Sequence record: PV340856.1
Reading direction: 5' to 3' (one strand)
DNA: 64,000 nt
Shown: positions 8,328-58,838 of the stretch, piece by piece
Layout: every line of letters starts with the position of its first letter
Position numbering within the stretch: the stretch's first letter is position 1
Notes under the pieces: generated by a model
Told to the model about the DNA's origin: nothing
What the model saw: only the letters and a program-made list of their open reading frames with translations
Database searches by the model: none
Program-made: the position numbers and the translations under genes

Positions 8328-9431
8328 ATGAGGTTTCAAATGACCGCCCGCGTGAACTCCGATTCTCTGATTAACTCTCTTCGTGATCTTTATGGAGAGA
8401 CTATTACGTCTGCTGACGTTCGTGGCTATTGTGCATCCAATGGTGTTTCTTATCCTACCGTCACTAAGTATCTTGATAGTTACAAGTCTGGTCGTGGTAA
8501 GTGGAATCTGACAGTTCAGGAAGCTCGGCAACAACTTGAAACAGCAGCTTCTGCACCTGCGTTCATTCCTCCTGTCGAACAAAATCTTATCCCACAGAAA
8601 GATGATACTTTCGTCAAGTTTGGTAATTTCACTGATATTAAAAAAATTATTAAGTCCAATCTATTCTATCCGACGTTCATTACTGGTCTTTCTGGTAACG
8701 GCAAGACGTTCTCTATCGAACAAGCGTGTGCTCAACTCGGACGGGAACTCATCCGTGTAAACATTACTATCGAGACAGATGAAGATGATCTCATTGGTGG
8801 ATTCCGTCTCGTCAATGGTGAAACCGTTTGGCACAATGGTCCAGTCATCGAAGCCCTGGAGCGCGGTGCGATTCTACTGCTTGACGAGATTGACCTGGCT
8901 TCCAACAAGATTCTTTGCCTTCAATCAATCCTCGAAGGAAAAGGTGTTTTCCTAAAGAAAATCGGTAAGTTTGTTCGACCTACTGCAGGTTTTAATGTCA
9001 TCGCCACGGCCAACACCAAGGGCAAGGGATCTGACGATGGACGATTCATTGGAACTAACGTGCTCAACGAAGCATTCCTAGAGCGTTTCCCTGTCACCTT
9101 TGAGCAGGAGTATCCAACTCCGTCAACTGAACAAAAGATTCTTGAAGGTATTGCTCTGGATCTTGGGGTAGAAGATCGTGACTTCTGCAAACGTCTTGTG
9201 GACTGGGCAGATATTATTCGTAAGACCTTTTATGACGGTGGTGTTGAGGAAATTATCTCTACTCGTCGTCTCGTCCACATTATCCGTGCTTATAACATCT
9301 TTGGTGATAAAGCGAAAGCAATTCAAGTTTGCTTGAATCGTTTCGATGATGAGACGAAGCAAGCATTTATGGATCTCTACGATAAAGTAGATACCGAAGT
9401 TGATTTTGGAGAAGGAGAAGAAAATGAATGA
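8328..9431 (+). CDS. cobS: CobS-like MoxR-family AAA+ ATPase
   Basis: GLSGNGKT Walker A, LLLDEID Walker B, ATANTKG, NEAFLERF; start 8328 or 8340. Confidence 0.9.
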   Translation: MRFQMTARVNSDSLINSLRDLYGETITSADVRGYCASNGVSYPTVTKYLDSYKSGRGKWNLTVQEARQQLETAASAPAFIPPVEQNLIPQKDDTFVKFGNFTDIKKIIKSNLFYPTFITGLSGNGKTFSIEQACAQLGRELIRVNITIETDEDDLIGGFRLVNGETVWHNGPVIEALERGAILLLDEIDLASNKILCLQSILEGKGVFLKKIGKFVRPTAGFNVIATANTKGKGSDDGRFIGTNVLNEAFLERFPVTFEQEYPTPSTEQKILEGIALDLGVEDRDFCKRLVDWADIIRKTFYDGGVEEIISTRRLVHIIRAYNIFGDKAKAIQVCLNRFDDETKQAFMDLYDKVDTEVDFGEGEENE

Positions 9432-10059
9432 TTTGTGGTTGAATTGGAAAATCGCAGTTTTTGAAACATTTCCTGAACTGTATCACCATTCGACTTGGGC
9501 TAATTGGGAGGGAAAAGGAACCTCCCTCTTAGCCAAACTTTACGGAACACCTAAAGATAGGTACATCAATAAGTCTAGGGAGGTTGAGATCTGGGACGAT
9601 AAATCCTGCATCTACAACAACATCATCTATCCTAGGACAGGTGAAAATCTCCCTTGCTTTGGTATGGACCTTATGGGGTTCTTTGAAAAGAAAGTCATTA
9701 TTGTATTTGACTTTCAACATCCAGTAGAGAATTACTTGTTCTCTCATCCTGATCTGCCAAAGGCGGAAGGAAATTACAGGTTCTTTGAACCTGGAAATCA
9801 CTTCTCAGAAAACATTTACGTTGCTAAATGTACTATGTCTGAAGTGGATGAACACCTGGAAATGTTCAAGAAATACTTGACTGTTTACAAAGAAATGTTA
9901 GAATGTAGGAAACCTAGCGGGTTTTCAATGTATTCTACATACGGAGATTTCGACAAATATATGAGGAGACTTGATCCCGTTGGTGGATATCTTTCTAGTA
10001 AATTTGGAGAAGAAAAAGCAGAATCATTGGTAAACGATTTCCTTTTCTGTTATGGTTAA
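9424..10059 (+). CDS. pebS: Phycoerythrobilin synthase (ferredoxin-dependent bilin reductase)
   Basis: LPCFGMDLM..KKVIIVFDFQHP, YRFFEPGNHFS, DFDKYMRRLDPV, FVND-like C-terminus match recalled P-SSM2 PebS. Confidence 0.88.
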   Translation: MNDLWLNWKIAVFETFPELYHHSTWANWEGKGTSLLAKLYGTPKDRYINKSREVEIWDDKSCIYNNIIYPRTGENLPCFGMDLMGFFEKKVIIVFDFQHPVENYLFSHPDLPKAEGNYRFFEPGNHFSENIYVAKCTMSEVDEHLEMFKKYLTVYKEMLECRKPSGFSMYSTYGDFDKYMRRLDPVGGYLSSKFGEEKAESLVNDFLFCYG

Positions 10060-32690: not shown

Positions 32691-32710
32691 TTTGAAAAGT
32701 CTTTATTCTA

Positions 32711-32971
32711 ATGACGTACACAATTAAACCACTGGGTCCTCAGACGGATCTAGACCCTGCTACTGATGTAGATAGTGCTACAACTGTGCATCTTGTAAAT
32801 ACACATTCGGCAGCAGTAGTAATTGTAAGATCTACTTCTGCGAACGTTGGAATTAGTAGTTTTACTCTGCCTGCTGGAGAAATGGTTAAGGTAGAGAAGG
32901 ATGCATCGGACAAATTGTCAGCATCTTCTAACGGAGGCGACGTAAAAGTCACAAAAGTTGCCGCTGGATAA
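32711..32971 (+). CDS. Small late hypothetical / structural protein
   Basis: ATAAATA upstream; beta-rich. Confidence 0.65.
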   Translation: MTYTIKPLGPQTDLDPATDVDSATTVHLVNTHSAAVVIVRSTSANVGISSFTLPAGEMVKVEKDASDKLSASSNGGDVKVTKVAAG

Positions 32972-33010
32972 TTGAGTAATTATAATTAGTAATAGAGTTC
33001 TCCGAGGTTT

Positions 33011-33514
33011 ATGGAGAAGATCAACACTTTCGTTTTGAACATCACTGTGACAATACTTGACTTCCTTTATAGAGGTCGAGACTATCAACGTTTTTGGGTG
33101 CTTGAGGAAATTGCCCGAGCACCCTATTTTGCTTTTTTGAGTGTCTTACATTTCAGAGAAAGCATGGGACTTCGCGGTCCTGAGCATCTATATTTGATGA
33201 AACAACACTTTGAGCAGTCGGTTAATGAAACAGAACATCTGGAGTACATGGAATCTAGGGGCGGTAATTCTTATTGGATTGATCGCTTTGTTGCCAAACA
33301 CCTCGTACTTATCTACTATTGGAGTAATGTGGTTTATTATGGGTTGGCTCCTCGCCTTGCTTACCATCTCTCCTACGAGGTAGAGATACATGCAGCAGAA
33401 ACTTATGCTAAGTATCTTGCTATCAATGGACATGATGACAAGATCCTTGAGATTTTGAATGATGAATTAGAACACTCTAGAGAATTAAAATTAGCAATGG
33501 AGAAAATTAAATGA
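33011..33514 (+). CDS. ptox: Plastoquinol terminal oxidase
   Basis: RFWVLEEIARAPYF, NETEHL, EVEIHA..TY, DELEH di-iron carboxylate motifs. Confidence 0.95.
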   Translation: MEKINTFVLNITVTILDFLYRGRDYQRFWVLEEIARAPYFAFLSVLHFRESMGLRGPEHLYLMKQHFEQSVNETEHLEYMESRGGNSYWIDRFVAKHLVLIYYWSNVVYYGLAPRLAYHLSYEVEIHAAETYAKYLAINGHDDKILEILNDELEHSRELKLAMEKIK

Positions 33515-34530
33515 AAGTAGGAATGATCGGACTTGGACGGATGGGCGAAGGTATGTCCCGCCGTCTCATTAAATCAGGACATGAAGTTTGGGGATACAGA
33601 AACAATGCTGCTAAGGCAGAAGAGCAGTATGAGAAAGGTTACATCAGTGGATACACCACTTCAATCAAATACCTCGTACAAGAAGTCGGGGCAAAAGGTC
33701 CTGGCGTTTATATGATGGTAGTGCCAGCAGAAACAGTGGAGGACACCCTCAATGAGTTACTACAATTTTGTGTGGAAGGCGATATTATTATTGATCATGG
33801 CAATTCCAATTTTAAAGACTCTAGACGCAGGGCAGAACGGTTGGAAAAACTTGGCATCCAATATCTTGACTGTGGTACTAGTGGTGGTGTTTATGGTCTG
33901 GAGCGTGGATATTGTCTTATGGTTGGTGGTGCAAATACTGCAGTATCCGTCTGTTCTCCTATCTTCAGAGCCCTCGCCCCAGGCATTGGATCTGCCTCTC
34001 GTACAGACCCCCTCAGTCATGAAACAAGTGCCGAACATGGTTGGTTACATTGTGGATCAGCTGGAGCAGGTCATTTTGTGAAGATGGTCCATAATGGTGT
34101 GGAGTATGGTATTATGCAGGCATACGCTGAAGGTTTCAATATTCTTCATGAAGCAAATGCTGGATCCAAGTATGTTAAGGAAGGAGATGCTGAGGTTGCC
34201 CCAATGGAAAACCCTGCCGATTATCAGTATGATATTGACTGTGCTGAAGTGGCTGAGCTTTGGCGTCGTGGTAGCGTTGTTGGTTCTTGGTTACTTGACC
34301 TTACTGCGAATGTACTACGCCGCGATGGTGAGCTTCGTAAGTTTGATGGGGGCGTCTCAGATTCTGGCGAAGGTCGTTGGACTGTCCATGCTGCTGTGGA
34401 CCTTGGCGTACCCGCTCCTGTCATCAGCAGTGCGTTGTGGGCACGTTTTGAGTCGCGCCGTCTTGGTGCTTTCACAGCCAAGGTTTTAAATGGTATGCGT
34501 GCTATGTTTGGTGGTCATGATGTTCGGTGA
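33511..34530 (+). CDS. gnd: 6-phosphogluconate dehydrogenase
   Basis: IGLGRMG, DHGNS, DCGTSGG, GHFVKMVHNGVEY, SGEGRW, MRAMFGGH. Confidence 0.97.
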   Translation: MKVGMIGLGRMGEGMSRRLIKSGHEVWGYRNNAAKAEEQYEKGYISGYTTSIKYLVQEVGAKGPGVYMMVVPAETVEDTLNELLQFCVEGDIIIDHGNSNFKDSRRRAERLEKLGIQYLDCGTSGGVYGLERGYCLMVGGANTAVSVCSPIFRALAPGIGSASRTDPLSHETSAEHGWLHCGSAGAGHFVKMVHNGVEYGIMQAYAEGFNILHEANAGSKYVKEGDAEVAPMENPADYQYDIDCAEVAELWRRGSVVGSWLLDLTANVLRRDGELRKFDGGVSDSGEGRWTVHAAVDLGVPAPVISSALWARFESRRLGAFTAKVLNGMRAMFGGHDVR

Positions 34531-34648
34531 ATTTCTTAAATGGATATCGATGCCCTTTGTATTATCCACAATATATTTCGGGATACGAAAAGGTGAAAAT
34601 AACTACTACGACTCAGACGACTATGATGGAAATGGAACCGCTCACTAG
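34520..34648 (+). CDS. ndhP: NdhP-like small subunit of NDH-1L (42 aa, absent from ORF track)
   Basis: MFGEFLKWISMPFVLSTIYFGIRKGENNYYDSDDYDGNGTAH*; C-terminus matches the recalled NdhP motif FFGxxNGxYDxDxYxGNGSAH; GGTGG 5 nt upstream. Confidence 0.85.
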   Translation: MFGEFLKWISMPFVLSTIYFGIRKGENNYYDSDDYDGNGTAH

Positions 34649-35963
34649 AGGCATAGTTATCTTCGGTGCGACTGGAGATCTATGTAAACGAAAACTTATT
34701 CCAGCACTTCATAAACTTTGGGAGAAAGATCTTCTTCCAAAGGGATTTTTAATTACTGGTGCCGCAAGAAGGGATATTGGGGTGGAAGCATGGAAAGAAT
34801 CTCTTGGAGAATATCCAGAGGAATTCCTACATCAATTAGATTATGTTCCTTGTGATTTATCTAATCAGGAAACTCTTCATCATCTTCCTGAAACAGACGA
34901 CACAACATATTTTCTATCTGTTCCGCCAGAAAGATATGAGTCAGCTATTGTTAATCTTAAACAAGGAGGACTTTTAGATGACCCAGAAACATCCCGTGTG
35001 GTTATTGAAAAACCCTTTGGGTACGATCTTAAATCTGCTAATCATTTACAGTCAGTGGTGGGCAGGCATTTACGCGAGAAACAAGTATATCGCATTGATC
35101 ATTATCTCGGTAAAGATACTGTTAATAACATCCTTGCCACCCGTTTTGGCAATATTCTACTGGAACCACTTTGGAACAGGGAGTACATAGAAGAGGTTCA
35201 GATCTATGCAACTGAAACTATTGGTTGTGAAGGTCGTTCACAATACTATGAAGGTGCAGGTGTCGTAAGAGACATGCTGCAAAATCATATGCTTCAGGTT
35301 CTTGCATTGATTGCGATGGAAGCACCATGTCGTATGGATGCAAAAGAAATTCGTAGAGAAAAGGTGAAAGTTTTATCTGCCACACGATTGGGAGAAAAAC
35401 TTATCACTGGTCAGTATGCAAGTTATCGTGATGAAGAAGGTGTTGGTCCTGAATCAATGACTCAAACTTTTGTTGCTGGTGATCTTTATATTGATAACTG
35501 GAGATGGAAAGGTGTTCCATTTCACTTTATGACTGGTAAGAAAATGCCTTATCAGTGTGTAGAAGTTGTGATTAAACTTAAAGCACCGCCACTCAGTTTG
35601 TTTGAGGGTGAGACAAATGATCGTATTGTAATGCGTTTACAACCACATGCTCATCTTGATATTCGCATTGATGTTAAGTCTCCTGGACTTGGTGATTCTG
35701 TTGAACCAGCTACTTTGACTCACCGTTATCCTGACTGGTTGGGTGTGGATGGTTATGAGAAACTTCTTCATGATGCTATCAATGACGATCAATCGCACTT
35801 TGTTCACTCTGAAGAAGTGTTGGAATCCTGGAGAATCGTTGACGATCTAATCTGCACTGGAGATAATTGTAAAGTTAGAACCGCACCTTACATCTATCAT
35901 GATGGGCAGTGGGGTCCTACTCATAAAACACAATTTATTACTGATTGGGATTATCCAGAATGA
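34623..35963 (+). CDS. zwf: Glucose-6-phosphate dehydrogenase
   Basis: GATGDL, EKPFG, RIDHYLGK, DMLQNH; likely start 34623-34632 rather than 34527. Confidence 0.97.
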   Translation: MMEMEPLTRGIVIFGATGDLCKRKLIPALHKLWEKDLLPKGFLITGAARRDIGVEAWKESLGEYPEEFLHQLDYVPCDLSNQETLHHLPETDDTTYFLSVPPERYESAIVNLKQGGLLDDPETSRVVIEKPFGYDLKSANHLQSVVGRHLREKQVYRIDHYLGKDTVNNILATRFGNILLEPLWNREYIEEVQIYATETIGCEGRSQYYEGAGVVRDMLQNHMLQVLALIAMEAPCRMDAKEIRREKVKVLSATRLGEKLITGQYASYRDEEGVGPESMTQTFVAGDLYIDNWRWKGVPFHFMTGKKMPYQCVEVVIKLKAPPLSLFEGETNDRIVMRLQPHAHLDIRIDVKSPGLGDSVEPATLTHRYPDWLGVDGYEKLLHDAINDDQSHFVHSEEVLESWRIVDDLICTGDNCKVRTAPYIYHDGQWGPTHKTQFITDWDYPE

Positions 35964-36040
35964 TTATTGCCAAAGCAACTTTTATTTTCGGAATCATTAT
36001 ATTCTTAATATGTTGGGGGCTTTCTGATGCCTATCGTTAG
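35960..36040 (+). CDS. ndhQ: NdhQ-like minimal single-helix protein (26 aa, absent from ORF track)
   Basis: ATG overlaps zwf stop (ATGA), in frame with TAG 36038-36040; C-terminus FGIIIFLICWGLSDAYR aligns ungapped with recalled NdhQ LGFIAGLIWWALHTAYA. Confidence 0.62.
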   Translation: MIIAKATFIFGIIIFLICWGLSDAYR

Positions 36041-36173
36041 ATCAATAATGCAAAATCCATGGGCACTGGGATTTATGTCCTGGTGCCTTATATGTGTACC
36101 CATCATAGGAATACAGTTAATTCATAAATATGGGTGGCAACATTGGGAACCATTTAATAGGAGCCATAAATGA
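36027..36173 (+). CDS. Small single-TM protein (48 aa, absent from track)
   Basis: MPIVRSIMQNPWALGFMSWCLICVPIIGIQLIHKYGWQHWEPFNRSHK*. Confidence 0.6.
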   Translation: MPIVRSIMQNPWALGFMSWCLICVPIIGIQLIHKYGWQHWEPFNRSHK

Positions 36174-36379
36174 ATCCCGTAATTTTAGTTGGGTGTTTTA
36201 CGCCTCTTATTATCATCTTCATTGTGATGAAACTTGCTGTTTGGGTTGAAGCCGTTAATGCAGAACAGGATTATGTCAGACAAGAACCTCTACGAAAACG
36301 AGGACCCTTTGTGGCAAACCCGTATGAGGATGTTGACTCAGAGGAAGAGGAGTATGGAAATCGCACAGACTATAGATGA
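36170..36379 (+). CDS. Small TM protein with acidic tail
   Basis: ATGA overlap; GCFTPLIIIFIVMKLAVW..EEEEYGNRTDYR. Confidence 0.7.
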   Translation: MNPVILVGCFTPLIIIFIVMKLAVWVEAVNAEQDYVRQEPLRKRGPFVANPYEDVDSEEEEYGNRTDYR

Positions 36380-36503
36380 CGCTCTTCATCAATACTATGT
36401 TGTAGAACAAGGCAAAGAAGTTCCTAACTGGAGATATATAAAGGACGCCGACTGGTGGATTGAGTATCTCAGAAGTTTGGGAATAGATCCGAGGAATCCA
36501 TGA
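36354..36503 (+). CDS. Small hypothetical protein
   Basis: MEIAQTIDDALHQYY..VPNWRYIKDADWWIEYL; GAGGAG upstream. Confidence 0.6.
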   Translation: MEIAQTIDDALHQYYVVEQGKEVPNWRYIKDADWWIEYLRSLGIDPRNP

Positions 36504-36691
36504 ATCAGGAACCAGATTATAAAATAGATATGTCTATTGAGGACATACGTCTTTTATACCATTGTGTTCAAGAAACTATTAGGACTTGGCCTGGTTCTCC
36601 TGCTAGACCAGCTGAAGAACAAGAACACTTGTGGTTTCTTAGAGATTGGCTTTTTAGAATAATATTGGAATATAAATTTGATAACTTATGA
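36500..36691 (+). CDS. Small hypothetical protein
   Basis: ATGA overlap; WPGSPARPAEEQEHL. Confidence 0.7.
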   Translation: MNQEPDYKIDMSIEDIRLLYHCVQETIRTWPGSPARPAEEQEHLWFLRDWLFRIILEYKFDNL

Positions 36692-36855
36692 ATTTATTAC
36701 TTCGTCCGTTAGAAGATGTTAATGATGTAACTTGGAGTATCATCATATCCCTCGTAATTCTTTTAGTTGGTGTTACTTATTACATATATACCATTATGAG
36801 TTTGGCATTTAAGGAACTTGAAGATGTCAATAACACTTCCAAATCGGAGGAATAG
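36688..36855 (+). CDS. Small single-TM protein (55 aa, absent from track)
   Basis: MNLLLRPLEDVNDVTWSIIISLVILLVGVTYYIYTIMSLAFKELED..; start overlaps upstream stop. Confidence 0.65.
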   Translation: MNLLLRPLEDVNDVTWSIIISLVILLVGVTYYIYTIMSLAFKELEDVNNTSKSEE

Positions 36856-37203: not shown

Positions 37204-37227
37204 TTTATCATATTCACTAAGTTTTTG

Positions 37228-37255
37228 GAGACCTCTGAACGGGGTCTCTTTTTTT
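37228..37255 (+). terminator. Intrinsic terminator
   Basis: GAGACC..GGTCTC followed by T7. Confidence 0.75.
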
Positions 37256-55792: not shown

Positions 55793-55866
<74 letters not shown>

Positions 55867-55870
55867 CTTC

Positions 55871-55952
55871 GTCGATGTGGCGGAATTGGTATACGCGCTG
55901 GGTTTAGGTTCCAGTGAGGCAACTCATGAAGGTTCAAGTCCTTTCATCGACA
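55871..55952 (+). tRNA. trnL: tRNA-Leu(TAG)
   Basis: Acceptor GTCGATG/CATCGAC; CTGGG-TTTAGGT-TCCAG; long variable arm; TTCAAGT. Confidence 0.92.
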
Positions 55953-55954
55953 CT

Positions 55955-56560
55955 ATGGATTTTAAAATTAGACAATATTGTAACGATCCCTTTAATACTT
56001 GTAGGTTATATGACCCTGCAATATTTGAATGTCCTTACGCAGAAGATATTAATCCAGGCCTCATGGAGTGGATTAAGTCCAATGTAATTCCACAACCTTC
56101 AAATAATGCATTAACAACTCCTTTTAAACCTACTAAAATAGGATTACCGATTAAAGAGTTGAAAGTTTTGTTTGATTGGATTAATTCTGTATCGGTTGAG
56201 TCTTCTGAAATGCTTGCTAGGGGTACAGGAACAGCATATCATTCTGCTCCTCCAGAATTTAAAAATTTTGAAGTTGCAGATTATTGGGGAATGTGGTATA
56301 ATGAAGGAGACTTTGCAGAAGAACATAATCATTTTCCATACTCAATGTCTTTTGCATACTATGTAAACTGCCCAGAAGGAAGTTCTCCTCTAGTATTAGA
56401 AGGCAATGAAATTCAGGTTACTGAAGGTAGATTGATTATGTTTGCTGGTCACCAAAACCACAAGGTAGATCCTTGTCCAGTAAATAATAGATTTATGATT
56501 GCTGGTAACATTGCGTATCTTGGTTTTGTAGACGATAATGCGGGTGTAGTTCAGCGGTAG
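55955..56560 (+). CDS. 2OG-Fe(II) oxygenase-like protein (stop inside tRNA-Gly)
   Basis: EHNH..HKV..RFMIAGN; start 55955 just after tRNA-Leu. Confidence 0.8.
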   Translation: MDFKIRQYCNDPFNTCRLYDPAIFECPYAEDINPGLMEWIKSNVIPQPSNNALTTPFKPTKIGLPIKELKVLFDWINSVSVESSEMLARGTGTAYHSAPPEFKNFEVADYWGMWYNEGDFAEEHNHFPYSMSFAYYVNCPEGSSPLVLEGNEIQVTEGRLIMFAGHQNHKVDPCPVNNRFMIAGNIAYLGFVDDNAGVVQR

Positions 56561-56611
56561 AACGCTATCCTTCCAAGTTAGATGTCGTCGGTTCGATTCC
56601 GATCACCCGCT
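56540..56611 (+). tRNA. trnG: tRNA-Gly(TCC)
   Basis: GCGGGTG/CACCCGC; loop CTTCCAA; GGTTCGATTCC. Confidence 0.93.
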
Positions 56612-56641
56612 TGTTAAATAGTAATGTGTGTGCAATGACAC

Positions 56642-56926
56642 ATGAATACCAAGTTACGAGTCCAACAATCATATGTCTGGTATGAAACTCCCAATCATAC
56701 CATGATCGTTAAAATGTATTTTTTGAATTATATACCTTTTACATTTGATGAGATTCCAGCTGTTGCAATGGATGATCCAGAAGTAATTATGGAAGCAAAT
56801 AAAAATCAAGTAATCACAACAGAACAATTGTATAAATCTGCTTCTTATCTTTCTGAAGAACTTGCAATGCCTTTAATTTATGAAATGGATTTAGAAAACC
56901 CACAAGATCTTCCAGATGCATTATGA
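56642..56926 (+). CDS. Conserved hypothetical protein
   Basis: IVKMYFLNYIPFTFDE..SYLSEELAMPLIYE. Confidence 0.7.
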   Translation: MNTKLRVQQSYVWYETPNHTMIVKMYFLNYIPFTFDEIPAVAMDDPEVIMEANKNQVITTEQLYKSASYLSEELAMPLIYEMDLENPQDLPDAL

Positions 56927-57579
56927 TTGACGCATGGTTCTGTGTTCCCATATACAGAAATTATATAATTCCCACCAAGGATCAAGATTTTAAAATTGAA
57001 AAGTTTTTTTATAAATATTGTCAAGACTTTGGACATCTCCTAGACGGTGGCATTCATAATGTTACTGGAGATATCACAGGACTTATTAAAATTTCCGAAC
57101 TTGATGAGTTTAAATGGATTAATTCTGATTTATGTTCGCATGTAAATAATTTTCTGAGACAAATTGGCGTAGATGTCTCAGAACATATGATTCACATACA
57201 GAAATCTTGGCCTGTTGTTTGTGACACAAATGGAAGTGTGTCTCCACATAACCATAAAAATGCACATATCAGTGCAGTTTATTATGTTAAATGTGATTCG
57301 GACAATGGCGGAGATATTGAATTCCATTGCCCACCTTATCACCCTATTTTAAATTTGCCAGTGATGCTGGAGAATAATTCTACAGTTAGATATACTCCAG
57401 AAAAAAATCTACTTCTAATTTTCCCTTCCTCTCTAGAACATAGAGTTACGAAATATATCGGAAAAGACTTCCGTTTTTCTATCTCTTATGATATAATGAT
57501 TACGTCAAAAAAAGACTCTGGACTGGATACAGAATTAATCGTGACACATCCATCAATGTGGACTGTTTTGGGAGATTAG
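56923..57579 (+). CDS. 2OG-Fe(II) oxygenase-like protein (stop inside tRNA-Val)
   Basis: PHNH..SAVYY..IFPSSLEHRV..RFSISYD. Confidence 0.8.
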   Translation: MIDAWFCVPIYRNYIIPTKDQDFKIEKFFYKYCQDFGHLLDGGIHNVTGDITGLIKISELDEFKWINSDLCSHVNNFLRQIGVDVSEHMIHIQKSWPVVCDTNGSVSPHNHKNAHISAVYYVKCDSDNGGDIEFHCPPYHPILNLPVMLENNSTVRYTPEKNLLLIFPSSLEHRVTKYIGKDFRFSISYDIMITSKKDSGLDTELIVTHPSMWTVLGD

Positions 57580-57641
57580 CTCAGAGGTAGAGCTACTCGT
57601 TTACACCGAGTCGGTCACTGGTTCAATCCCAGTATCTCCCA
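57570..57641 (+). tRNA. trnV: tRNA-Val(TAC)
   Basis: GGGAGAT/ATCTCCC; ACTCG-TTTACAC-CGAGT; GGTTCAATCC. Confidence 0.93.
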
Positions 57642-57648
57642 TAAAAAA

Positions 57649-57897
57649 ATGTTACACGTTAAATGCACTTGTTGCAATAAAGAAATTATTTCGTCTTCAA
57701 AGCTACAGACATGTGGTTGTGAAAATAATATGATTGTGAGAAATGGAACAGTCACTGCACAAGATTTAAATTACGTAGTTTTAATTAAATCTAAAGATAA
57801 TATAAAAAATCGTGGTTTCCTGACAAATGCTGACCTAAAATACCAAGAGGAACGACGCAAACGTAAAGTTCGTAAACTAACTTTTGAGGAACGCTAA
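57649..57897 (+). CDS. Zn-ribbon hypothetical protein
   Basis: CTCC..CGCEN; RKRKVRKLTFEER. Confidence 0.7.
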   Translation: MLHVKCTCCNKEIISSSKLQTCGCENNMIVRNGTVTAQDLNYVVLIKSKDNIKNRGFLTNADLKYQEERRKRKVRKLTFEER

Positions 57898-58097
57898 TGA
57901 TAAATCTCGATGAACGATACCATTCGTATCTTGCAGGACAGAAAAAATTTCGCATTGATGGTGTGGAGGAGGCAGTAAAAGGATATGGATTTGAGTGTGA
58001 TGGTTCATCAATTGTTGGTTATTATGTGTTGACAGAGAACCATAAACTCGTATATAATCTAAAAGAACAGTTCCAATATATGGAACATCTTTCTTAA
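57897..58097 (+). CDS. Conserved hypothetical protein
   Basis: MINLDERYHSYL..FRIDGVEE. Confidence 0.7.
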   Translation: MINLDERYHSYLAGQKKFRIDGVEEAVKGYGFECDGSSIVGYYVLTENHKLVYNLKEQFQYMEHLS

Positions 58098-58135
58098 ATA
58101 TATAACTTACGTTTAAAAAAATCGCATTAAAGATC

Positions 58136-58738
58136 ATGTTTCAAGTTCCAAACGCTGAATTGTTTTATCTCACTCAGAAGAATACTCTGAAGAGAAAATC
58201 CGTACATGATGAATTTAGAGGAAAGAAAGTTGTAGTTTACTTTGTTTGCGGAGCATATACCCCCACTTGCAGCACAAAACACGTACCTGAATATGAAGCT
58301 GCTTATGATGAAATCAGATCTTTGGGTATTGATGAAGTCTATTGTTGTTCTATGAATGATCCATGGGTTATGAAATCCTGGTGGAAGTCCATGGATATTA
58401 AGAAACATAAGTATCTGTGTGATGGAAACGGTGCTTGGCTCTTGAGGTTTGAGCAACTTGCTTCTGCAGGACAAAAAGTAGTTCAGTTCTTTAATACGGG
58501 TATGGGAAGACGTGCATGGAGACATGCTCTTGTCATTCATGACAATGTTGTTATGCATGAAGTGCAAGAGACTTCAGAAACTGGAGAAAAAAATAACTCT
58601 CCAGACGATCCATATGAATTCACTACTGCTCAATCAATCATTGACTATCTTAAAACAAGAGAAGAAGTCAAAAAGAGAAATTTAGAATTTAATGAATCTA
58701 AAACTTCATTGTCCGATCCTACAGATGTAAACATCTGA
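58136..58738 (+). CDS. Peroxiredoxin (Prx5/redoxin type)
   Basis: GAYTPTCSTKH peroxidatic motif, SMNDPWVMKSW, DGNG, GMGRRAWR. Confidence 0.85.
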   Translation: MFQVPNAELFYLTQKNTLKRKSVHDEFRGKKVVVYFVCGAYTPTCSTKHVPEYEAAYDEIRSLGIDEVYCCSMNDPWVMKSWWKSMDIKKHKYLCDGNGAWLLRFEQLASAGQKVVQFFNTGMGRRAWRHALVIHDNVVMHEVQETSETGEKNNSPDDPYEFTTAQSIIDYLKTREEVKKRNLEFNESKTSLSDPTDVNI

Positions 58739-58764
58739 TACTAACCCCCCCTTCGGGGGATCTA

Positions 58765-58838
58765 CGGGGCTTAGTTCAGTTTGGTAGAACGCTCGCTTTG
58801 GGAGCGAGAGGTCACAGGTTCAAATCCTGTAGCCCCGA
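58765..58838 (+). tRNA. trnP: tRNA-Pro(TGG)
   Basis: CGGGGCT/AGCCCCG; CTCGC-TTTGGGA-GCGAG; GGTTCAAATCC. Confidence 0.95.

What the first reader, a model, noticed from the sequence alone, without database searches (positions are those of the whole stretch)
33011..36040. PTOX-gnd-ndhP-zwf-ndhQ: a coupled phage operon for an OPP to NDH-1L to plastoquinone to PTOX electron route
Seen: five consecutive overlap-coupled genes (ATGA at 33511 and 35960; overlaps at 34520-34530 and 34623-34648), two of them micro-ORFs missed by the track. Established: Zwf and Gnd make NADPH; cyanobacterial NDH-1 reduces plastoquinone from ferredoxin (linked to NADPH via FNR); NdhP and NdhQ stabilise NDH-1L, the respiratory/cyclic-flow form, as opposed to the CO2-uptake NDH-1MS forms; PTOX oxidises plastoquinol. 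Inference: the phage supplies the substrate source, the small subunits that favour NDH-1L, and the terminal sink, sustaining proton pumping and ATP in light or dark without carbon fixation. Viral ndhP-like genes have, as I recall, been noted before; I am not aware of an NdhP+NdhQ pair interleaved with OPP genes and PTOX being described.
Basis: partly seen in the sequence, partly recalled or inferred. Interest (0 to 1): 0.88.

Follow-up and report, generated by a model that had tools for sequence, protein, structure and literature searches.

The report
Phage NdhP plus mini-NdhQ cassette
A marine Synechococcus virus carries, hidden between its known sugar-oxidation and plastoquinol-oxidase genes, two tiny unannotated genes that copy the two small subunits which hold the host's NDH-1L proton-pumping complex together; the second of these (NdhQ-like) appears not to have been reported in viruses before.

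Summary
The window is Synechococcus phage Sf-FS3. All reported coordinates and overlaps are exact. ptoX, gnd and zwf pass curated family thresholds.

Micro-ORF 34520-34648 is a genuine NdhP. It matches the NdhP chain of solved NDH-1L (E=9e-5) and is under purifying selection in its own frame. It occurs in 241 phage records, almost always unannotated.

Micro-ORF 35960-36040 is an N-terminally truncated NdhQ homologue.
- A canonical NdhQ HMM ranks it first of 2298 window segments (25 bits; next 6.9).
- It belongs to a family of 26-30-aa viral peptides. A profile of that family hits only NdhQ chains in the whole PDB.
- The family sits repeatedly next to ndhP, ptoX, gnd and a conserved small membrane gene.

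The same profile also finds a short chromosomal NdhQ-like gene in marine Synechococcus. A 2025 survey listed NdhQ as missing in that lineage.

The gene identities are therefore supported. The proposed OPP to NDH-1L to PQ to PTOX electron route remains inference and resembles a model published in 2016. The ptoX-gnd-zwf cluster and viral ndhP were already known. The viral mini-NdhQ, its pairing with ndhP and the host short form appear to be new.

The parts
32958..32986 (+). sigma-70-like promoter match (TTGCCG-17-TATAAT) in the 39-nt gap upstream of ptoX
   Evidence: It matches 10 of 12 positions. The number of such matches in the region equals the shuffle expectation, so this is weak evidence.
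33011..33514 (+). ptoX, plastoquinol terminal oxidase (167 aa)
   Evidence: Pfam AOX PF01786, E=4.2e-12, 46.6 bits against a cut-off of 22.7. The translation shows the carboxylate/histidine boxes LEE, NETEH, YEVEIH and DELEH. Annotated as PTOX in PV340856.1.
33511..34530 (+). gnd, 6-phosphogluconate dehydrogenase (339 aa, short form)
   Evidence: NCBIfam NF007161, 388 bits (cut-off 271), and TIGR00872, 349 bits (cut-off 297). Pfam NAD_binding_2 and 6PGD.
34520..34648 (+). ndhP, 42-aa single-helix NDH-1L subunit homologue (alternative start 34517); unannotated in GenBank
   Evidence: - It matches the NdhP chain 6khi_P at E=9.1e-5.
- A host NdhP HMM scores it E=1e-18.
- It belongs to phrog_2173, labelled 'unknown function'.
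- tblastn finds it in 241 phage records.
- Codon-position differences are 539/335/1075.
34623..35963 (+). zwf, glucose-6-phosphate dehydrogenase (446 aa from 34623; GenBank start 34626)
   Evidence: TIGR00871, 442.5 bits (cut-off 400.6). Pfam G6PD_N and G6PD_C. The GATGDL and RIDHYLGK motifs are visible.
35960..36040 (+). mini-ndhQ, a 26-aa peptide MIIAKATFIFGIIIFLICWGLSDAYR homologous to the TM helix and C-terminus of NdhQ; unannotated
   Evidence: - Canonical NdhQ HMM: 25.2 bits, E=1.2e-6, top of 2298 window segments.
- Viral-only HMM built without this peptide: E=5.4e-9.
- Profile of the family alignment A2 against the PDB: only NdhQ chains are returned.
- HMM of the host short form: E=1.7e-4.
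36027..36173 (+). 48-aa conserved small membrane protein (Syn9 gp123-like, phrog_1184), unannotated here; the constant downstream partner of mini-ndhQ in other phages
   Evidence: No PDB relative was found, so its function is unknown.
36170..36855 (+). four further overlap-coupled small ORFs (36170-36379, 36354-36503, 36500-36691, 36688-36855) that travel with the cassette
   Evidence: They belong to phrog_2832, phrog_2075, phrog_628 and phrog_10723/814, all of unknown function. The same order occurs in S-CAM9 and in contig L021/L079.
37227..37249 (+). intrinsic-terminator-like hairpin (9-bp stem, T-run); possible end of the transcription unit

Best explanation
This is a co-oriented, overlap-coupled auxiliary metabolic gene cassette of a T4-like cyanomyovirus: ptoX-gnd-ndhP-zwf-mini-ndhQ, followed by a conserved small membrane gene.

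Shown:
- The two unannotated micro-ORFs are homologues of NdhP and NdhQ.
- Among cellular sequences they resemble the picocyanobacterial forms most closely, which points to a host origin. That origin is inferred from similarity; no phylogeny was built.
- In solved NDH-1L structures NdhP and NdhQ are single-helix subunits that sandwich NdhD1 and contact NdhF1. They are specific to the respiratory/cyclic-flow form NDH-1L.

Inferred mechanism:
- During infection, when host protein synthesis declines, the phage supplies fresh copies of these two peptides.
- The NdhD1/NdhF1 module then stays attached to NDH-1M.
- Ferredoxin-to-plastoquinone electron input and proton pumping therefore continue.
- Phage PTOX oxidises surplus plastoquinol.
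- Zwf and Gnd make NADPH and ribulose-5-phosphate from stored carbon.

Whether OPP-derived NADPH actually feeds NDH-1L (through FNR and ferredoxin), rather than mainly feeding nucleotide synthesis, is open.
For: Identity of the three enzymes.

NdhP:
- It matches the PDB chain 6khi_P at E=9e-5, including the C-terminal YD.D.YDGNGTAH motif.
- A host NdhP HMM scores all 12 phage copies between E=1e-14 and 1e-22.
- Third-codon-position bias is 539/335/1075.
- It sits directly upstream of zwf even in the distant S-TIM5 lineage, where gnd lies about 1 kb away.

Mini-NdhQ:
- The canonical HMM places it top in the window, and shuffles never reach its score.
- There are 19 distinct viral versions.
- The L021 peptide is 15/24 identical to the helix and C-terminus of Synechococcus PCC 7502 NdhQ (my count from the alignment).
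- The A2 profile returns only 6khi_Q, 6l7o_Q and 6hum_Q from 177,635 PDB sequences.
- Non-cyanobacterial decoys that contain the same motif score at most 22 bits, against 27-36 bits for true NdhQ.

Linkage in other phages:
- miniNdhQ-ptoX-ndhP-gp123like (L023/L097)
- miniNdhQ-ndhP-gp123like (L093)
- miniNdhQ-gnd-ptoX-ndhP (L094/L095)
- ptoX-gnd-ndhP-...-miniNdhQ-gp123like (S-CAM9)
- ndhP followed by miniNdhQ (ACG-2014f)
- petE-x-miniNdhQ-gp123like (S-CAM4, S-RIM12)

Host link:
- Chromosomal Synechococcus and Cyanobium proteins have the form ME.GGSDNP-TM-WGLTHAYP.
- They score 25-41 bits with the canonical HMM and 32-44 bits against the other viral peptides; the window's own copy scores 18.7 bits.

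Roles of NdhP and NdhQ in NDH-1L: PMC6992706, PMC7021789, PMC11794437 and PMC4131877.
Against: - There is no expression, proteomic or binding evidence for either peptide.
- The mini-NdhQ lacks the roughly 18 N-terminal residues that are nearly invariant in canonical NdhQ, so it may not behave like NdhQ.
- The Sf-FS3 copy is the most divergent family member: 18 bits against the host-type HMM, ending AYR rather than AYP. It is unique to this isolate among the phage records searched, so selection on this particular copy cannot be measured.
- The close relatives S-SCSM1, S-CAM3 and Syn9 lack the gene, so it is dispensable.
- Cyanobacterial NDH-1 takes electrons from ferredoxin, not NADPH (PMC6992706). 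Host FNR transcripts fall during infection (PMC5082946). Both weaken a direct OPP-to-NDH-1 link.
- The promoter and terminator matches are no more frequent than in shuffled sequence.
Confidence: 0.6

Rival explanations
1. The genes share a neighbourhood but serve separate purposes and do not form one electron route. Zwf and Gnd supply NADPH and pentose for ribonucleotide reductase and dNTP synthesis. PTOX is a safety valve for photosystem-II electrons. NdhP and mini-NdhQ sustain PSI cyclic flow independently. The clustering reflects the hyperplastic region where cyanomyoviruses collect host-derived genes.
For: - nrdA and nrdB lie 3.8 kb downstream. In ACG-2014f, ndhP and mini-ndhQ lie directly after nrdA/nrdB with no zwf or gnd in the 6-kb locus fetched.
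- Gene order and content vary widely: zwf is missing in S-CAM9, both OPP genes are missing in L023, and petE is the neighbour in S-CAM4.
- The published model assigns PPP NADPH to nucleotide synthesis (PMC5082946).
- NDH-1 uses ferredoxin rather than NADPH (PMC6992706).
Against: ndhP, mini-ndhQ and ptoX stay adjacent after many rearrangements. ndhP stays fused to the zwf start even in S-TIM5. Both observations suggest selection for co-expression.
Confidence: 0.3
2. The phage peptides act as antagonists or modulators rather than spare parts. A truncated NdhQ, and an NdhP with a 3-residue KGE insertion, could occupy the NdhD1 sites and change NDH-1 isoform balance or activity. One example would be diverting NDH-1M away from the CO2-uptake forms.
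For: - The mini-NdhQ lacks the conserved N-terminal region.
- Phage NdhP carries a conserved RKGEN insertion relative to host TRGG/TRNG.
- Cyanophages are known to shut down carbon fixation (CP12; PMC5082946).
Against: - The host short form itself lacks NRGIMKF, so truncation is a lineage trend and not a sign of sabotage.
- The motifs conserved between phage and host are the helix and the C-terminus, which are the parts modelled against NdhD1.
- NdhP and NdhQ are absent from NDH-1MS anyway (PMC11794437).
Confidence: 0.07
3. The 26-aa ORF in this particular phage is a decaying or chance reading frame with no function, even though the family is real elsewhere.
For: - It is the most divergent member, ends in AYR and lacks the polar N-terminal residues of the others.
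- It has no close relative in 50,697 phage records.
- A frameshifted copy exists in a metagenome contig, L101, so decay does happen.
- The nearest relatives lack the gene.
Against: - The frame is intact from an ATG that overlaps the zwf stop.
- It keeps the invariant W-G-L-x-x-A-Y and the 14-nt overlap with the gp123-like start, as in S-CAM9.
- It scores 32.9 bits against a family HMM built without it.
Confidence: 0.1

Closest known systems
Cyanobacterial NdhP (Synechocystis Sml0013; T. elongatus chain P of 6KHI/6NBY/6HUM) and previously reported viral ndhP (P-TIM68, S-SCSM2R)
   Same: - About 42 aa with one TM helix.
- The C-terminal FG.R.G..YYD.D.Y.GNGTAH motif is conserved, and the last eight residues (YDGNGTAH) are identical to those of marine Synechococcus NdhP.
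- Viral homologues have been noted since Schwarz et al. 2013, as cited in PMC6596454.
   Different: - The phage form has a short N-terminus, like Prochlorococcus NdhP, and a conserved 3-residue insertion (RKGEN).
- It is far more common than the literature states: 241 phage records, against 'only P-TIM68 previously' in PMC12801897.
- It is nearly always unannotated, and PHROGs lists the family as of unknown function.
Cyanobacterial NdhQ (T. elongatus chain Q of 6KHI/6L7O/6HUM; Synechocystis Norf6)
   Same: It is a single TM helix ending in I-[WC]-W-G-L-x-x-A-Y. The alignment to HMM positions 19-43 is ungapped, and profile matches are reciprocal.
   Different: - It lacks the N-terminal MSDLNRGIMKF-GADSP region, so it is 26-30 aa rather than 43-47.
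- The C-terminus (WGL.[NH]AYP) matches the short picocyanobacterial form, not the canonical WWAL..AYA.
- No viral NdhQ was found in the literature library.
Cyanomyovirus ptoX-gnd-zwf (often petE-ptoX-gnd-zwf) AMG cluster, e.g. Syn9 gp119-122, S-RSM4, S-SM2
   Same: The genes, their order and their overlaps are the same. 171 phage records match this stretch of DNA.
   Different: - petE is not adjacent in Sf-FS3.
- Published annotations skip ndhP. Syn9 and S-SM2 instead extend zwf over it in another frame.
- Sf-FS3 has mini-ndhQ inserted between zwf and the gp123-like gene.
Phage-encoded photosystem subunits (psbA/psbD, hli, PSI cassette of P-TIM68) and the Thompson 2016 model of infected-cell electron flow
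   Same: The logic is the same: the phage supplies host-type membrane subunits to keep an energy-converting complex working. The published model already invokes PPP NADPH, NDH cyclic flow and PTOX as the terminal acceptor.
   Different: Here the supplied parts are accessory stabilisers of NDH-1L, not core reaction-centre proteins. No physiological data exist for them.

Membership tests
NdhP | About 40-50 aa with one transmembrane helix | tested here: met
   It is 42 aa, with the hydrophobic stretch FLKWISMPFVLSTIYFG.
NdhP | C-terminal conserved motif FG.R.G.Y(D/N).(D).Y.G(N/D)G.AH and a significant match to a structure-verified NdhP chain | tested here: met
   6khi_P E=9.1e-5 and 6hum_P E=8.5e-4. 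The HMM of 14 cyanobacterial NdhP gives E=1.1e-18.
NdhP | Reading frame maintained by selection | tested here: met
   The ORF is intact in all 12 phages examined. Codon-position differences are 539/335/1075.
NdhP | Physical subunit of NDH-1L bound to NdhD1/NdhF1 | not testable with these tools
   This needs BN-PAGE with mass spectrometry, or complementation.
NdhQ | Single TM helix ending in (I/L)-(W/I/C)-W-(A/G)-L-x-x-A-Y near the C-terminus | tested here: met
   The alignment to HMM positions 19-43 is ungapped at 25 bits. W-G-L-x-x-A-Y is invariant in the 8 peptides of alignment A2; S-CAM4 and S-RIM12 have WGI and WGV.
NdhQ | N-terminal NRGIMKF box followed by G-A-D-S/K-P | tested here: not met
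   Both are absent from the window peptide and from every viral member. The picocyanobacterial chromosomal form keeps GGSDNP but also lacks NRGIMKF.
NdhQ | Significant and specific profile match to structure-verified NdhQ chains | tested here: met
   The family profile A2 against the whole PDB returns only 6khi_Q (3.4e-5), 6l7o_Q (8.4e-5) and 6hum_Q (2.7e-3). The 26-mer on its own, with phmmer, gave no PDB hit.
NdhQ | Conservation as a coding sequence across genomes | tested here: inconclusive
   There are 19 distinct versions with codon-position differences of 2129/1414/2767. The sequences are very divergent, and the Sf-FS3 copy has no close relative.
NdhQ | Physical subunit of NDH-1L bound to NdhD1 | not testable with these tools
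   Only single-chain structure prediction is available here.
PTOX / alternative oxidase (PF01786) | Score above the Pfam gathering threshold and di-iron carboxylate boxes present | tested here: met
   46.6 bits against a cut-off of 22.7. LEE, NETEH, YEVEIH and DELEH are present in the translation.
Zwf (TIGR00871) and Gnd (NF007161/TIGR00872) | Score above the curated equivalog or subfamily cut-off | tested here: met
   zwf scores 442.5 against 400.6. gnd scores 388.1 against 271 and 348.9 against 297.2.

The most novel reading that the evidence does not exclude
Cyanomyoviruses carry a matched pair of host-derived NDH-1L-specific 'molecular glue' peptides: NdhP and a minimal NdhQ reduced to its helix. 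The pair is genetically welded to PTOX and the OPP dehydrogenases. It lets the virus lock host NDH-1 into the proton-pumping NDH-1L form, at the expense of the CO2-uptake forms, and run a PQ-reducing, PTOX-drained, ATP-generating pathway. As a by-product, the viral peptides reveal that marine Synechococcus, Cyanobium and possibly Prochlorococcus do have a short NdhQ that genome surveys had scored as absent.
Probability: 0.35. Interest if true: 0.85.

Novelty: new variant of a known kind. Interest (0 to 1): 0.72.

Why it matters
It would add NDH-1L to the host energy complexes that cyanophages service with their own parts. It would also give genetic support to the idea that infected cells run cyclic or respiratory electron flow with PTOX as the sink.

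It corrects annotation on a large scale. ndhP sits unannotated, or overwritten by an extended zwf, in hundreds of cyanophage genomes. PHROGs lists the family as of unknown function.

It defines a minimal NdhQ: one helix plus the WGL..AYP motif. That offers a natural experiment on which part of NdhQ is needed to stabilise NDH-1L.

It also points to an overlooked short ndhQ gene in marine picocyanobacteria. This changes the reported picture that this lineage lost NdhQ.

Tried and rejected
- Pfam and NCBIfam gave nothing for either micro-ORF. This is uninformative, because the clearly genuine NdhP was also missed.
- phmmer of the 26-mer against the PDB gave no hit. tblastn of the 26-mer against phages found only itself. 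tblastn of a canonical NdhQ consensus against phages found nothing. All three were superseded by the profile searches.
- My first reading of alignment A1 was that the 26-aa ORF is a by-product of a 52-nt insertion that splits the gp123-like gene. I rejected this once the same peptide was found upstream of the gp123-like gene in many other phages, with the same short overlap.
- The degenerate-pattern scan of genome contigs returned only full-length canonical NdhQ from non-marine cyanobacteria, plus decoys. The metagenome scan returned only phage-type contigs. The host gene came out only with the exhaustive profile search.
- There is no synteny between the Synechococcus short-ndhQ locus and the canonical ndhQ loci.
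- The gp123-like protein (phrog_1184) has no PDB relative.
- The promoter and terminator scans are not enriched over shuffles.


Full report
**What the window is.** Bases 32700-36400 are 100% identical to Synechococcus phage Sf-FS3 (PV340856.1). This is a 216-kb T4-like cyanomyovirus isolated on Synechococcus WH8102. Record coordinate equals window coordinate plus 124000. The surrounding genes are typical of such phages: UvsW/Y, gp43 polymerase, structural proteins, nrdA/nrdB and a tRNA cluster.

**Checking the observation.**
- ptoX is at 33011-33514 and gnd at 33511-34530. They share ATGA at 33511-33514.
- A small ORF has in-frame ATGs at 34517 and 34520 and a TAG at 34646-34648. It overlaps the gnd stop.
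- zwf starts at ATG 34623 or 34626 and ends at 35963. It overlaps that small ORF.
- A 26-codon ORF at 35960-36040 shares ATGA with the zwf stop.

GenBank annotates only ptoX and two 'dehydrogenases'. It leaves 34531-34625 and 35964-36169 empty. The three enzymes pass curated thresholds:
- AOX PF01786: 46.6 bits against a cut-off of 22.7.
- gnd NF007161: 388 bits against 271.
- zwf TIGR00871: 442.5 bits against 400.6.

The overlap-coupled chain continues beyond the finding through five more small ORFs, to 36855. A weak promoter-like site precedes ptoX (32958-32986). A good terminator-like hairpin lies at 37227-37249. Neither class of match is enriched over shuffles.

**The first micro-ORF is NdhP.**
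- The 42-aa product matches the NdhP chain of solved T. elongatus NDH-1L structures (6khi_P, E=9.1e-5). The match runs through the helix and the C-terminal YYD.D.Y.GNG.AH motif.
- An HMM of 14 cyanobacterial NdhP sequences, taken from the supplement of PMC12038448, scores the phage copies between E=1e-14 and 1e-22.
- Its last eight residues, YDGNGTAH, are identical to those of marine Synechococcus NdhP.
- tblastn finds the peptide in 241 of 50,697 phage records, nearly all Synechococcus myoviruses. In 39 of the 60 rows shown it lies on or between annotated gnd and zwf. It is annotated, as 'hypothetical protein', only in a few genomes such as Bellamy, S-TIM5 and ACG-2014f.
- Across 12 phages, nucleotide differences in its frame are 539/335/1075 by codon position (1/2/3). 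Selection therefore acts on this frame.
- The zwf frame is also open upstream. That explains why Syn9 and S-SM2 annotate a long zwf running over ndhP.
- In the distant S-TIM5 lineage, ndhP still abuts zwf although gnd is about 1 kb away.

Viral ndhP is known. PMC6596454 cites Schwarz et al. 2013 for it, and PMC10452541 and PMC12801897 also mention it. However, PMC12801897 calls it uncommon, and PHROGs lists the family (phrog_2173) as of unknown function.

**The second micro-ORF is a truncated NdhQ homologue.** Simple searches failed at first. Alignment with S-SCSM1, S-CAM3 and Syn9 then suggested that the ORF was merely about 52 extra bases splitting a conserved downstream gene. Profile methods reversed that view.
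- I built an HMM from 19 canonical NdhQ sequences (supplement of PMC12038448). I scanned all 2298 stop-to-stop segments of the window in six frames. The segment 35945-36037 scored 25.2 bits (E=1.2e-6) and the runner-up scored 6.9 bits.
- The alignment is ungapped. It runs from NdhQ position 19 to 43, covering the transmembrane helix and the WW(A/G)L..AY end. The N-terminal 18 residues are absent.
- Twenty thousand shuffles of the peptide reached at most 15.5 bits.

**The peptide belongs to a viral family.** A degenerate DNA pattern and a follow-up alignment search of IMG/VR and JGI metagenomes recovered more copies.
- They form a family of 26-30-aa viral peptides of the form M..-helix-WGL.[NH]AYP. 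I counted 19 distinct versions, with codon-position differences of 2129/1414/2767.
- Several score better than the window copy against canonical NdhQ (E about 1e-8). One is 15/24 identical to Synechococcus PCC 7502 NdhQ (my count from the alignment).
- An HMM of the viral peptides built without the window copy finds the window ORF at E=5.4e-9.
- That same HMM separates true NdhQ (27-36 bits) from non-cyanobacterial decoys containing the same motif (22 bits or less).
- A profile of the viral alignment, searched against all 177,635 distinct PDB sequences, returns exactly three hits. All three are NdhQ chains of NDH-1L: 6khi_Q at 3.4e-5, 6l7o_Q at 8.4e-5 and 6hum_Q at 2.7e-3.

**Genomic context of the family.** The mini-ndhQ gene is almost always immediately upstream of a conserved small membrane gene (Syn9 gp123-like, phrog_1184), often with a short overlap as in this window. 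It is repeatedly joined to ndhP, ptoX and gnd in different orders:
- miniNdhQ-ptoX-ndhP-gp123like (L023/L097)
- miniNdhQ-ndhP-gp123like (L093)
- miniNdhQ-gnd-ptoX-ndhP-gp123like (L094/L095)
- ptoX-gnd-ndhP-...-miniNdhQ-gp123like (S-CAM9, L103)
- ndhP followed by miniNdhQ after nrdAB (ACG-2014f)
- petE-x-miniNdhQ-gp123like (S-CAM4, S-RIM12)

Isolates that carry it include S-CAM9, S-CAM4, ACG-2014e/f/h/i/j, S-RIM12, DSL-LC03 and S-SRM01. In the records I inspected closely (S-CAM9, S-CAM4, S-RIM12, S-SRM01 and Sf-FS3) no annotated CDS corresponds to it. The window therefore shows the family's usual layout, not a random insertion. The nearest relatives simply lack the gene.

**The host has a short NdhQ too.** PMC12038448 lists NdhP but no NdhQ for Synechococcus WH8102, WH5701 and Prochlorococcus CCMP1375.
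- An exhaustive search of 1.84 billion representative proteins with the viral profile gave 53 hits. They fall into two classes: viral-type 29-33-mers, and proteins with a core of the form ME.GGSDNP-MLVLISGILLLGGIA.FI.WGLTHAYP.
- Members of the second class are chromosomal proteins of Synechococcus sp. CBW1107, Cyanobium sp., Synechococcus MIT S9503 and other marine Synechococcus.
- In CP138940.1 and CP138970.1 the gene lies between a thiE-like gene and ribF, among housekeeping genes, in DNA of 62% GC.
- The canonical NdhQ HMM scores these proteins at 25-41 bits.
- An HMM of these host forms scores the other viral peptides at 32-44 bits. That is higher than most canonical NdhQ sequences (13-34 bits). 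It scores the window peptide at 18.2 bits (E=1.7e-4; next best 8.7).
- The three tiers align cleanly: canonical (NRGIMKF-GADSP-helix-WWAL..AY), picocyanobacterial (GGSDNP-helix-WGL..AYP) and viral (helix-WGL..AYP).
- The viral gene is thus most simply a further-shortened copy of the picocyanobacterial gene.

**How it probably works.**

Established by others:
- Losing either one halves NDH-1L, and losing both abolishes it (PMC6992706, PMC7021789, PMC11794437, PMC4131877).
- NDH-1L takes electrons from ferredoxin and reduces plastoquinone while pumping protons. PTOX oxidises plastoquinol.

Inferred:
- The phage expresses both peptides together with PTOX, Zwf and Gnd, so that NDH-1L stays assembled as host synthesis fails.
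- Cyclic or respiratory electron input and ATP synthesis then continue, while PTOX prevents over-reduction.
- Thompson et al. 2016 drew essentially this scheme from transcript data, with PPP NADPH, NDH cyclic flow and PTOX as the terminal acceptor.

Not shown:
- That the peptides are made.
- That they enter NDH-1L.
- That OPP-derived NADPH is the electron source, rather than being reserved for the ribonucleotide reductase encoded nearby.

**Rivals.**
- The genes are co-located but serve separate ends.
- The truncated peptide modulates or antagonises NDH-1 instead of stabilising it.
- The Sf-FS3 copy, the most divergent member, is decaying.

**Novelty.** The ptoX-gnd-zwf cluster and viral ndhP are known. 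I found no paper in the searchable library that mentions a viral NdhQ, the ndhP/ndhQ pairing next to PTOX and the OPP genes, or the short picocyanobacterial NdhQ. The library is incomplete, and the original NdhP/NdhQ paper (PMC3040284) could not be read.

**Verdict.** The gene identities are supported, including the surprising NdhQ call, with the caveat that the peptide is truncated. The pathway interpretation is plausible but untested.

Noticed in passing
window 36027-36173 (+): There is an unannotated 48-aa single-helix protein with an invariant HKYGW.HWEPF tail (Syn9 gp123-like, phrog_1184, unknown function). In other phages it starts at the zwf ATGA. Wherever mini-ndhQ exists it follows it directly. 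It has no PDB relative.
   Followed up: partly
L112/L113 4001-4156 (Synechococcus chromosomes CP138940.1, CP138970.1); proteins P0054, P0057, P0079, P0082: Marine Synechococcus and Cyanobium chromosomes encode a short NdhQ-like protein (core MENGGSESTMHVLVWGVVLLGGIGFFIVWGLTNAYP) between a thiE-like gene and ribF. PMC12038448 scored NdhQ as absent in WH8102, WH5701 and Prochlorococcus CCMP1375.
   Followed up: partly
L002 4199-5644 (Syn9 gp122), L011 3011-4450 (S-SM2 zwf), L106 2154-2474 (S-CAM9 N161109_096): Public annotations extend zwf, or call a hypothetical ORF, across the ndhP region in a different frame. The codon-position pattern shows that ndhP is the selected frame, so these starts are probably mis-annotations.
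   Followed up: partly
L101 563-665 (metagenome contig FUWD013211608.1): This mini-ndhQ copy is split by a frameshift: its N-terminal half and C-terminal half are in different frames. It is either a pseudogene or an assembly error.
   Followed up: no
L015 2956-3051, L020 5911-6006, L021 14309-14404: In one viral subgroup an additional conserved 31-aa hydrophobic ORF (MHTLADYSPLIIIFLFCSFGVFLFILSVLSE) is wedged between mini-ndhQ and the gp123-like gene.
   Followed up: no
L009 3089-3322 (ACG-2014f Syn7803C7_203): In ACG-2014f, ndhP is followed by an annotated 77-aa ORF that overlaps ndhP exactly where zwf would start. Mini-ndhQ comes next. The 77-aa ORF could be a remnant of the zwf 5' end, but this was not examined.
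   Followed up: no
window 9424-10059 (+): The GenBank record annotates a 15,16-dihydrobiliverdin:ferredoxin oxidoreductase (pebS-like), which is another ferredoxin-dependent auxiliary metabolic gene in the same window.
   Followed up: no
window about 55793-58838 (+): According to the GenBank record there is a cluster of five tRNA genes (Arg, Leu, Gly, Val, Pro) interleaved with 2OG-Fe(II) oxygenase genes.
   Followed up: no
L013/L014/L017/L022/L023 upstream of mini-ndhQ; L004 3932-4165: A conserved small membrane protein (…IRRHNRNASIISMCVGWVVLALFAEGLLRL…) and an acidic 34-aa ORF ending in EDEEDD precede mini-ndhQ in one viral subgroup. The membrane protein also occurs downstream of zwf in S-SCSM1.
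   Followed up: no
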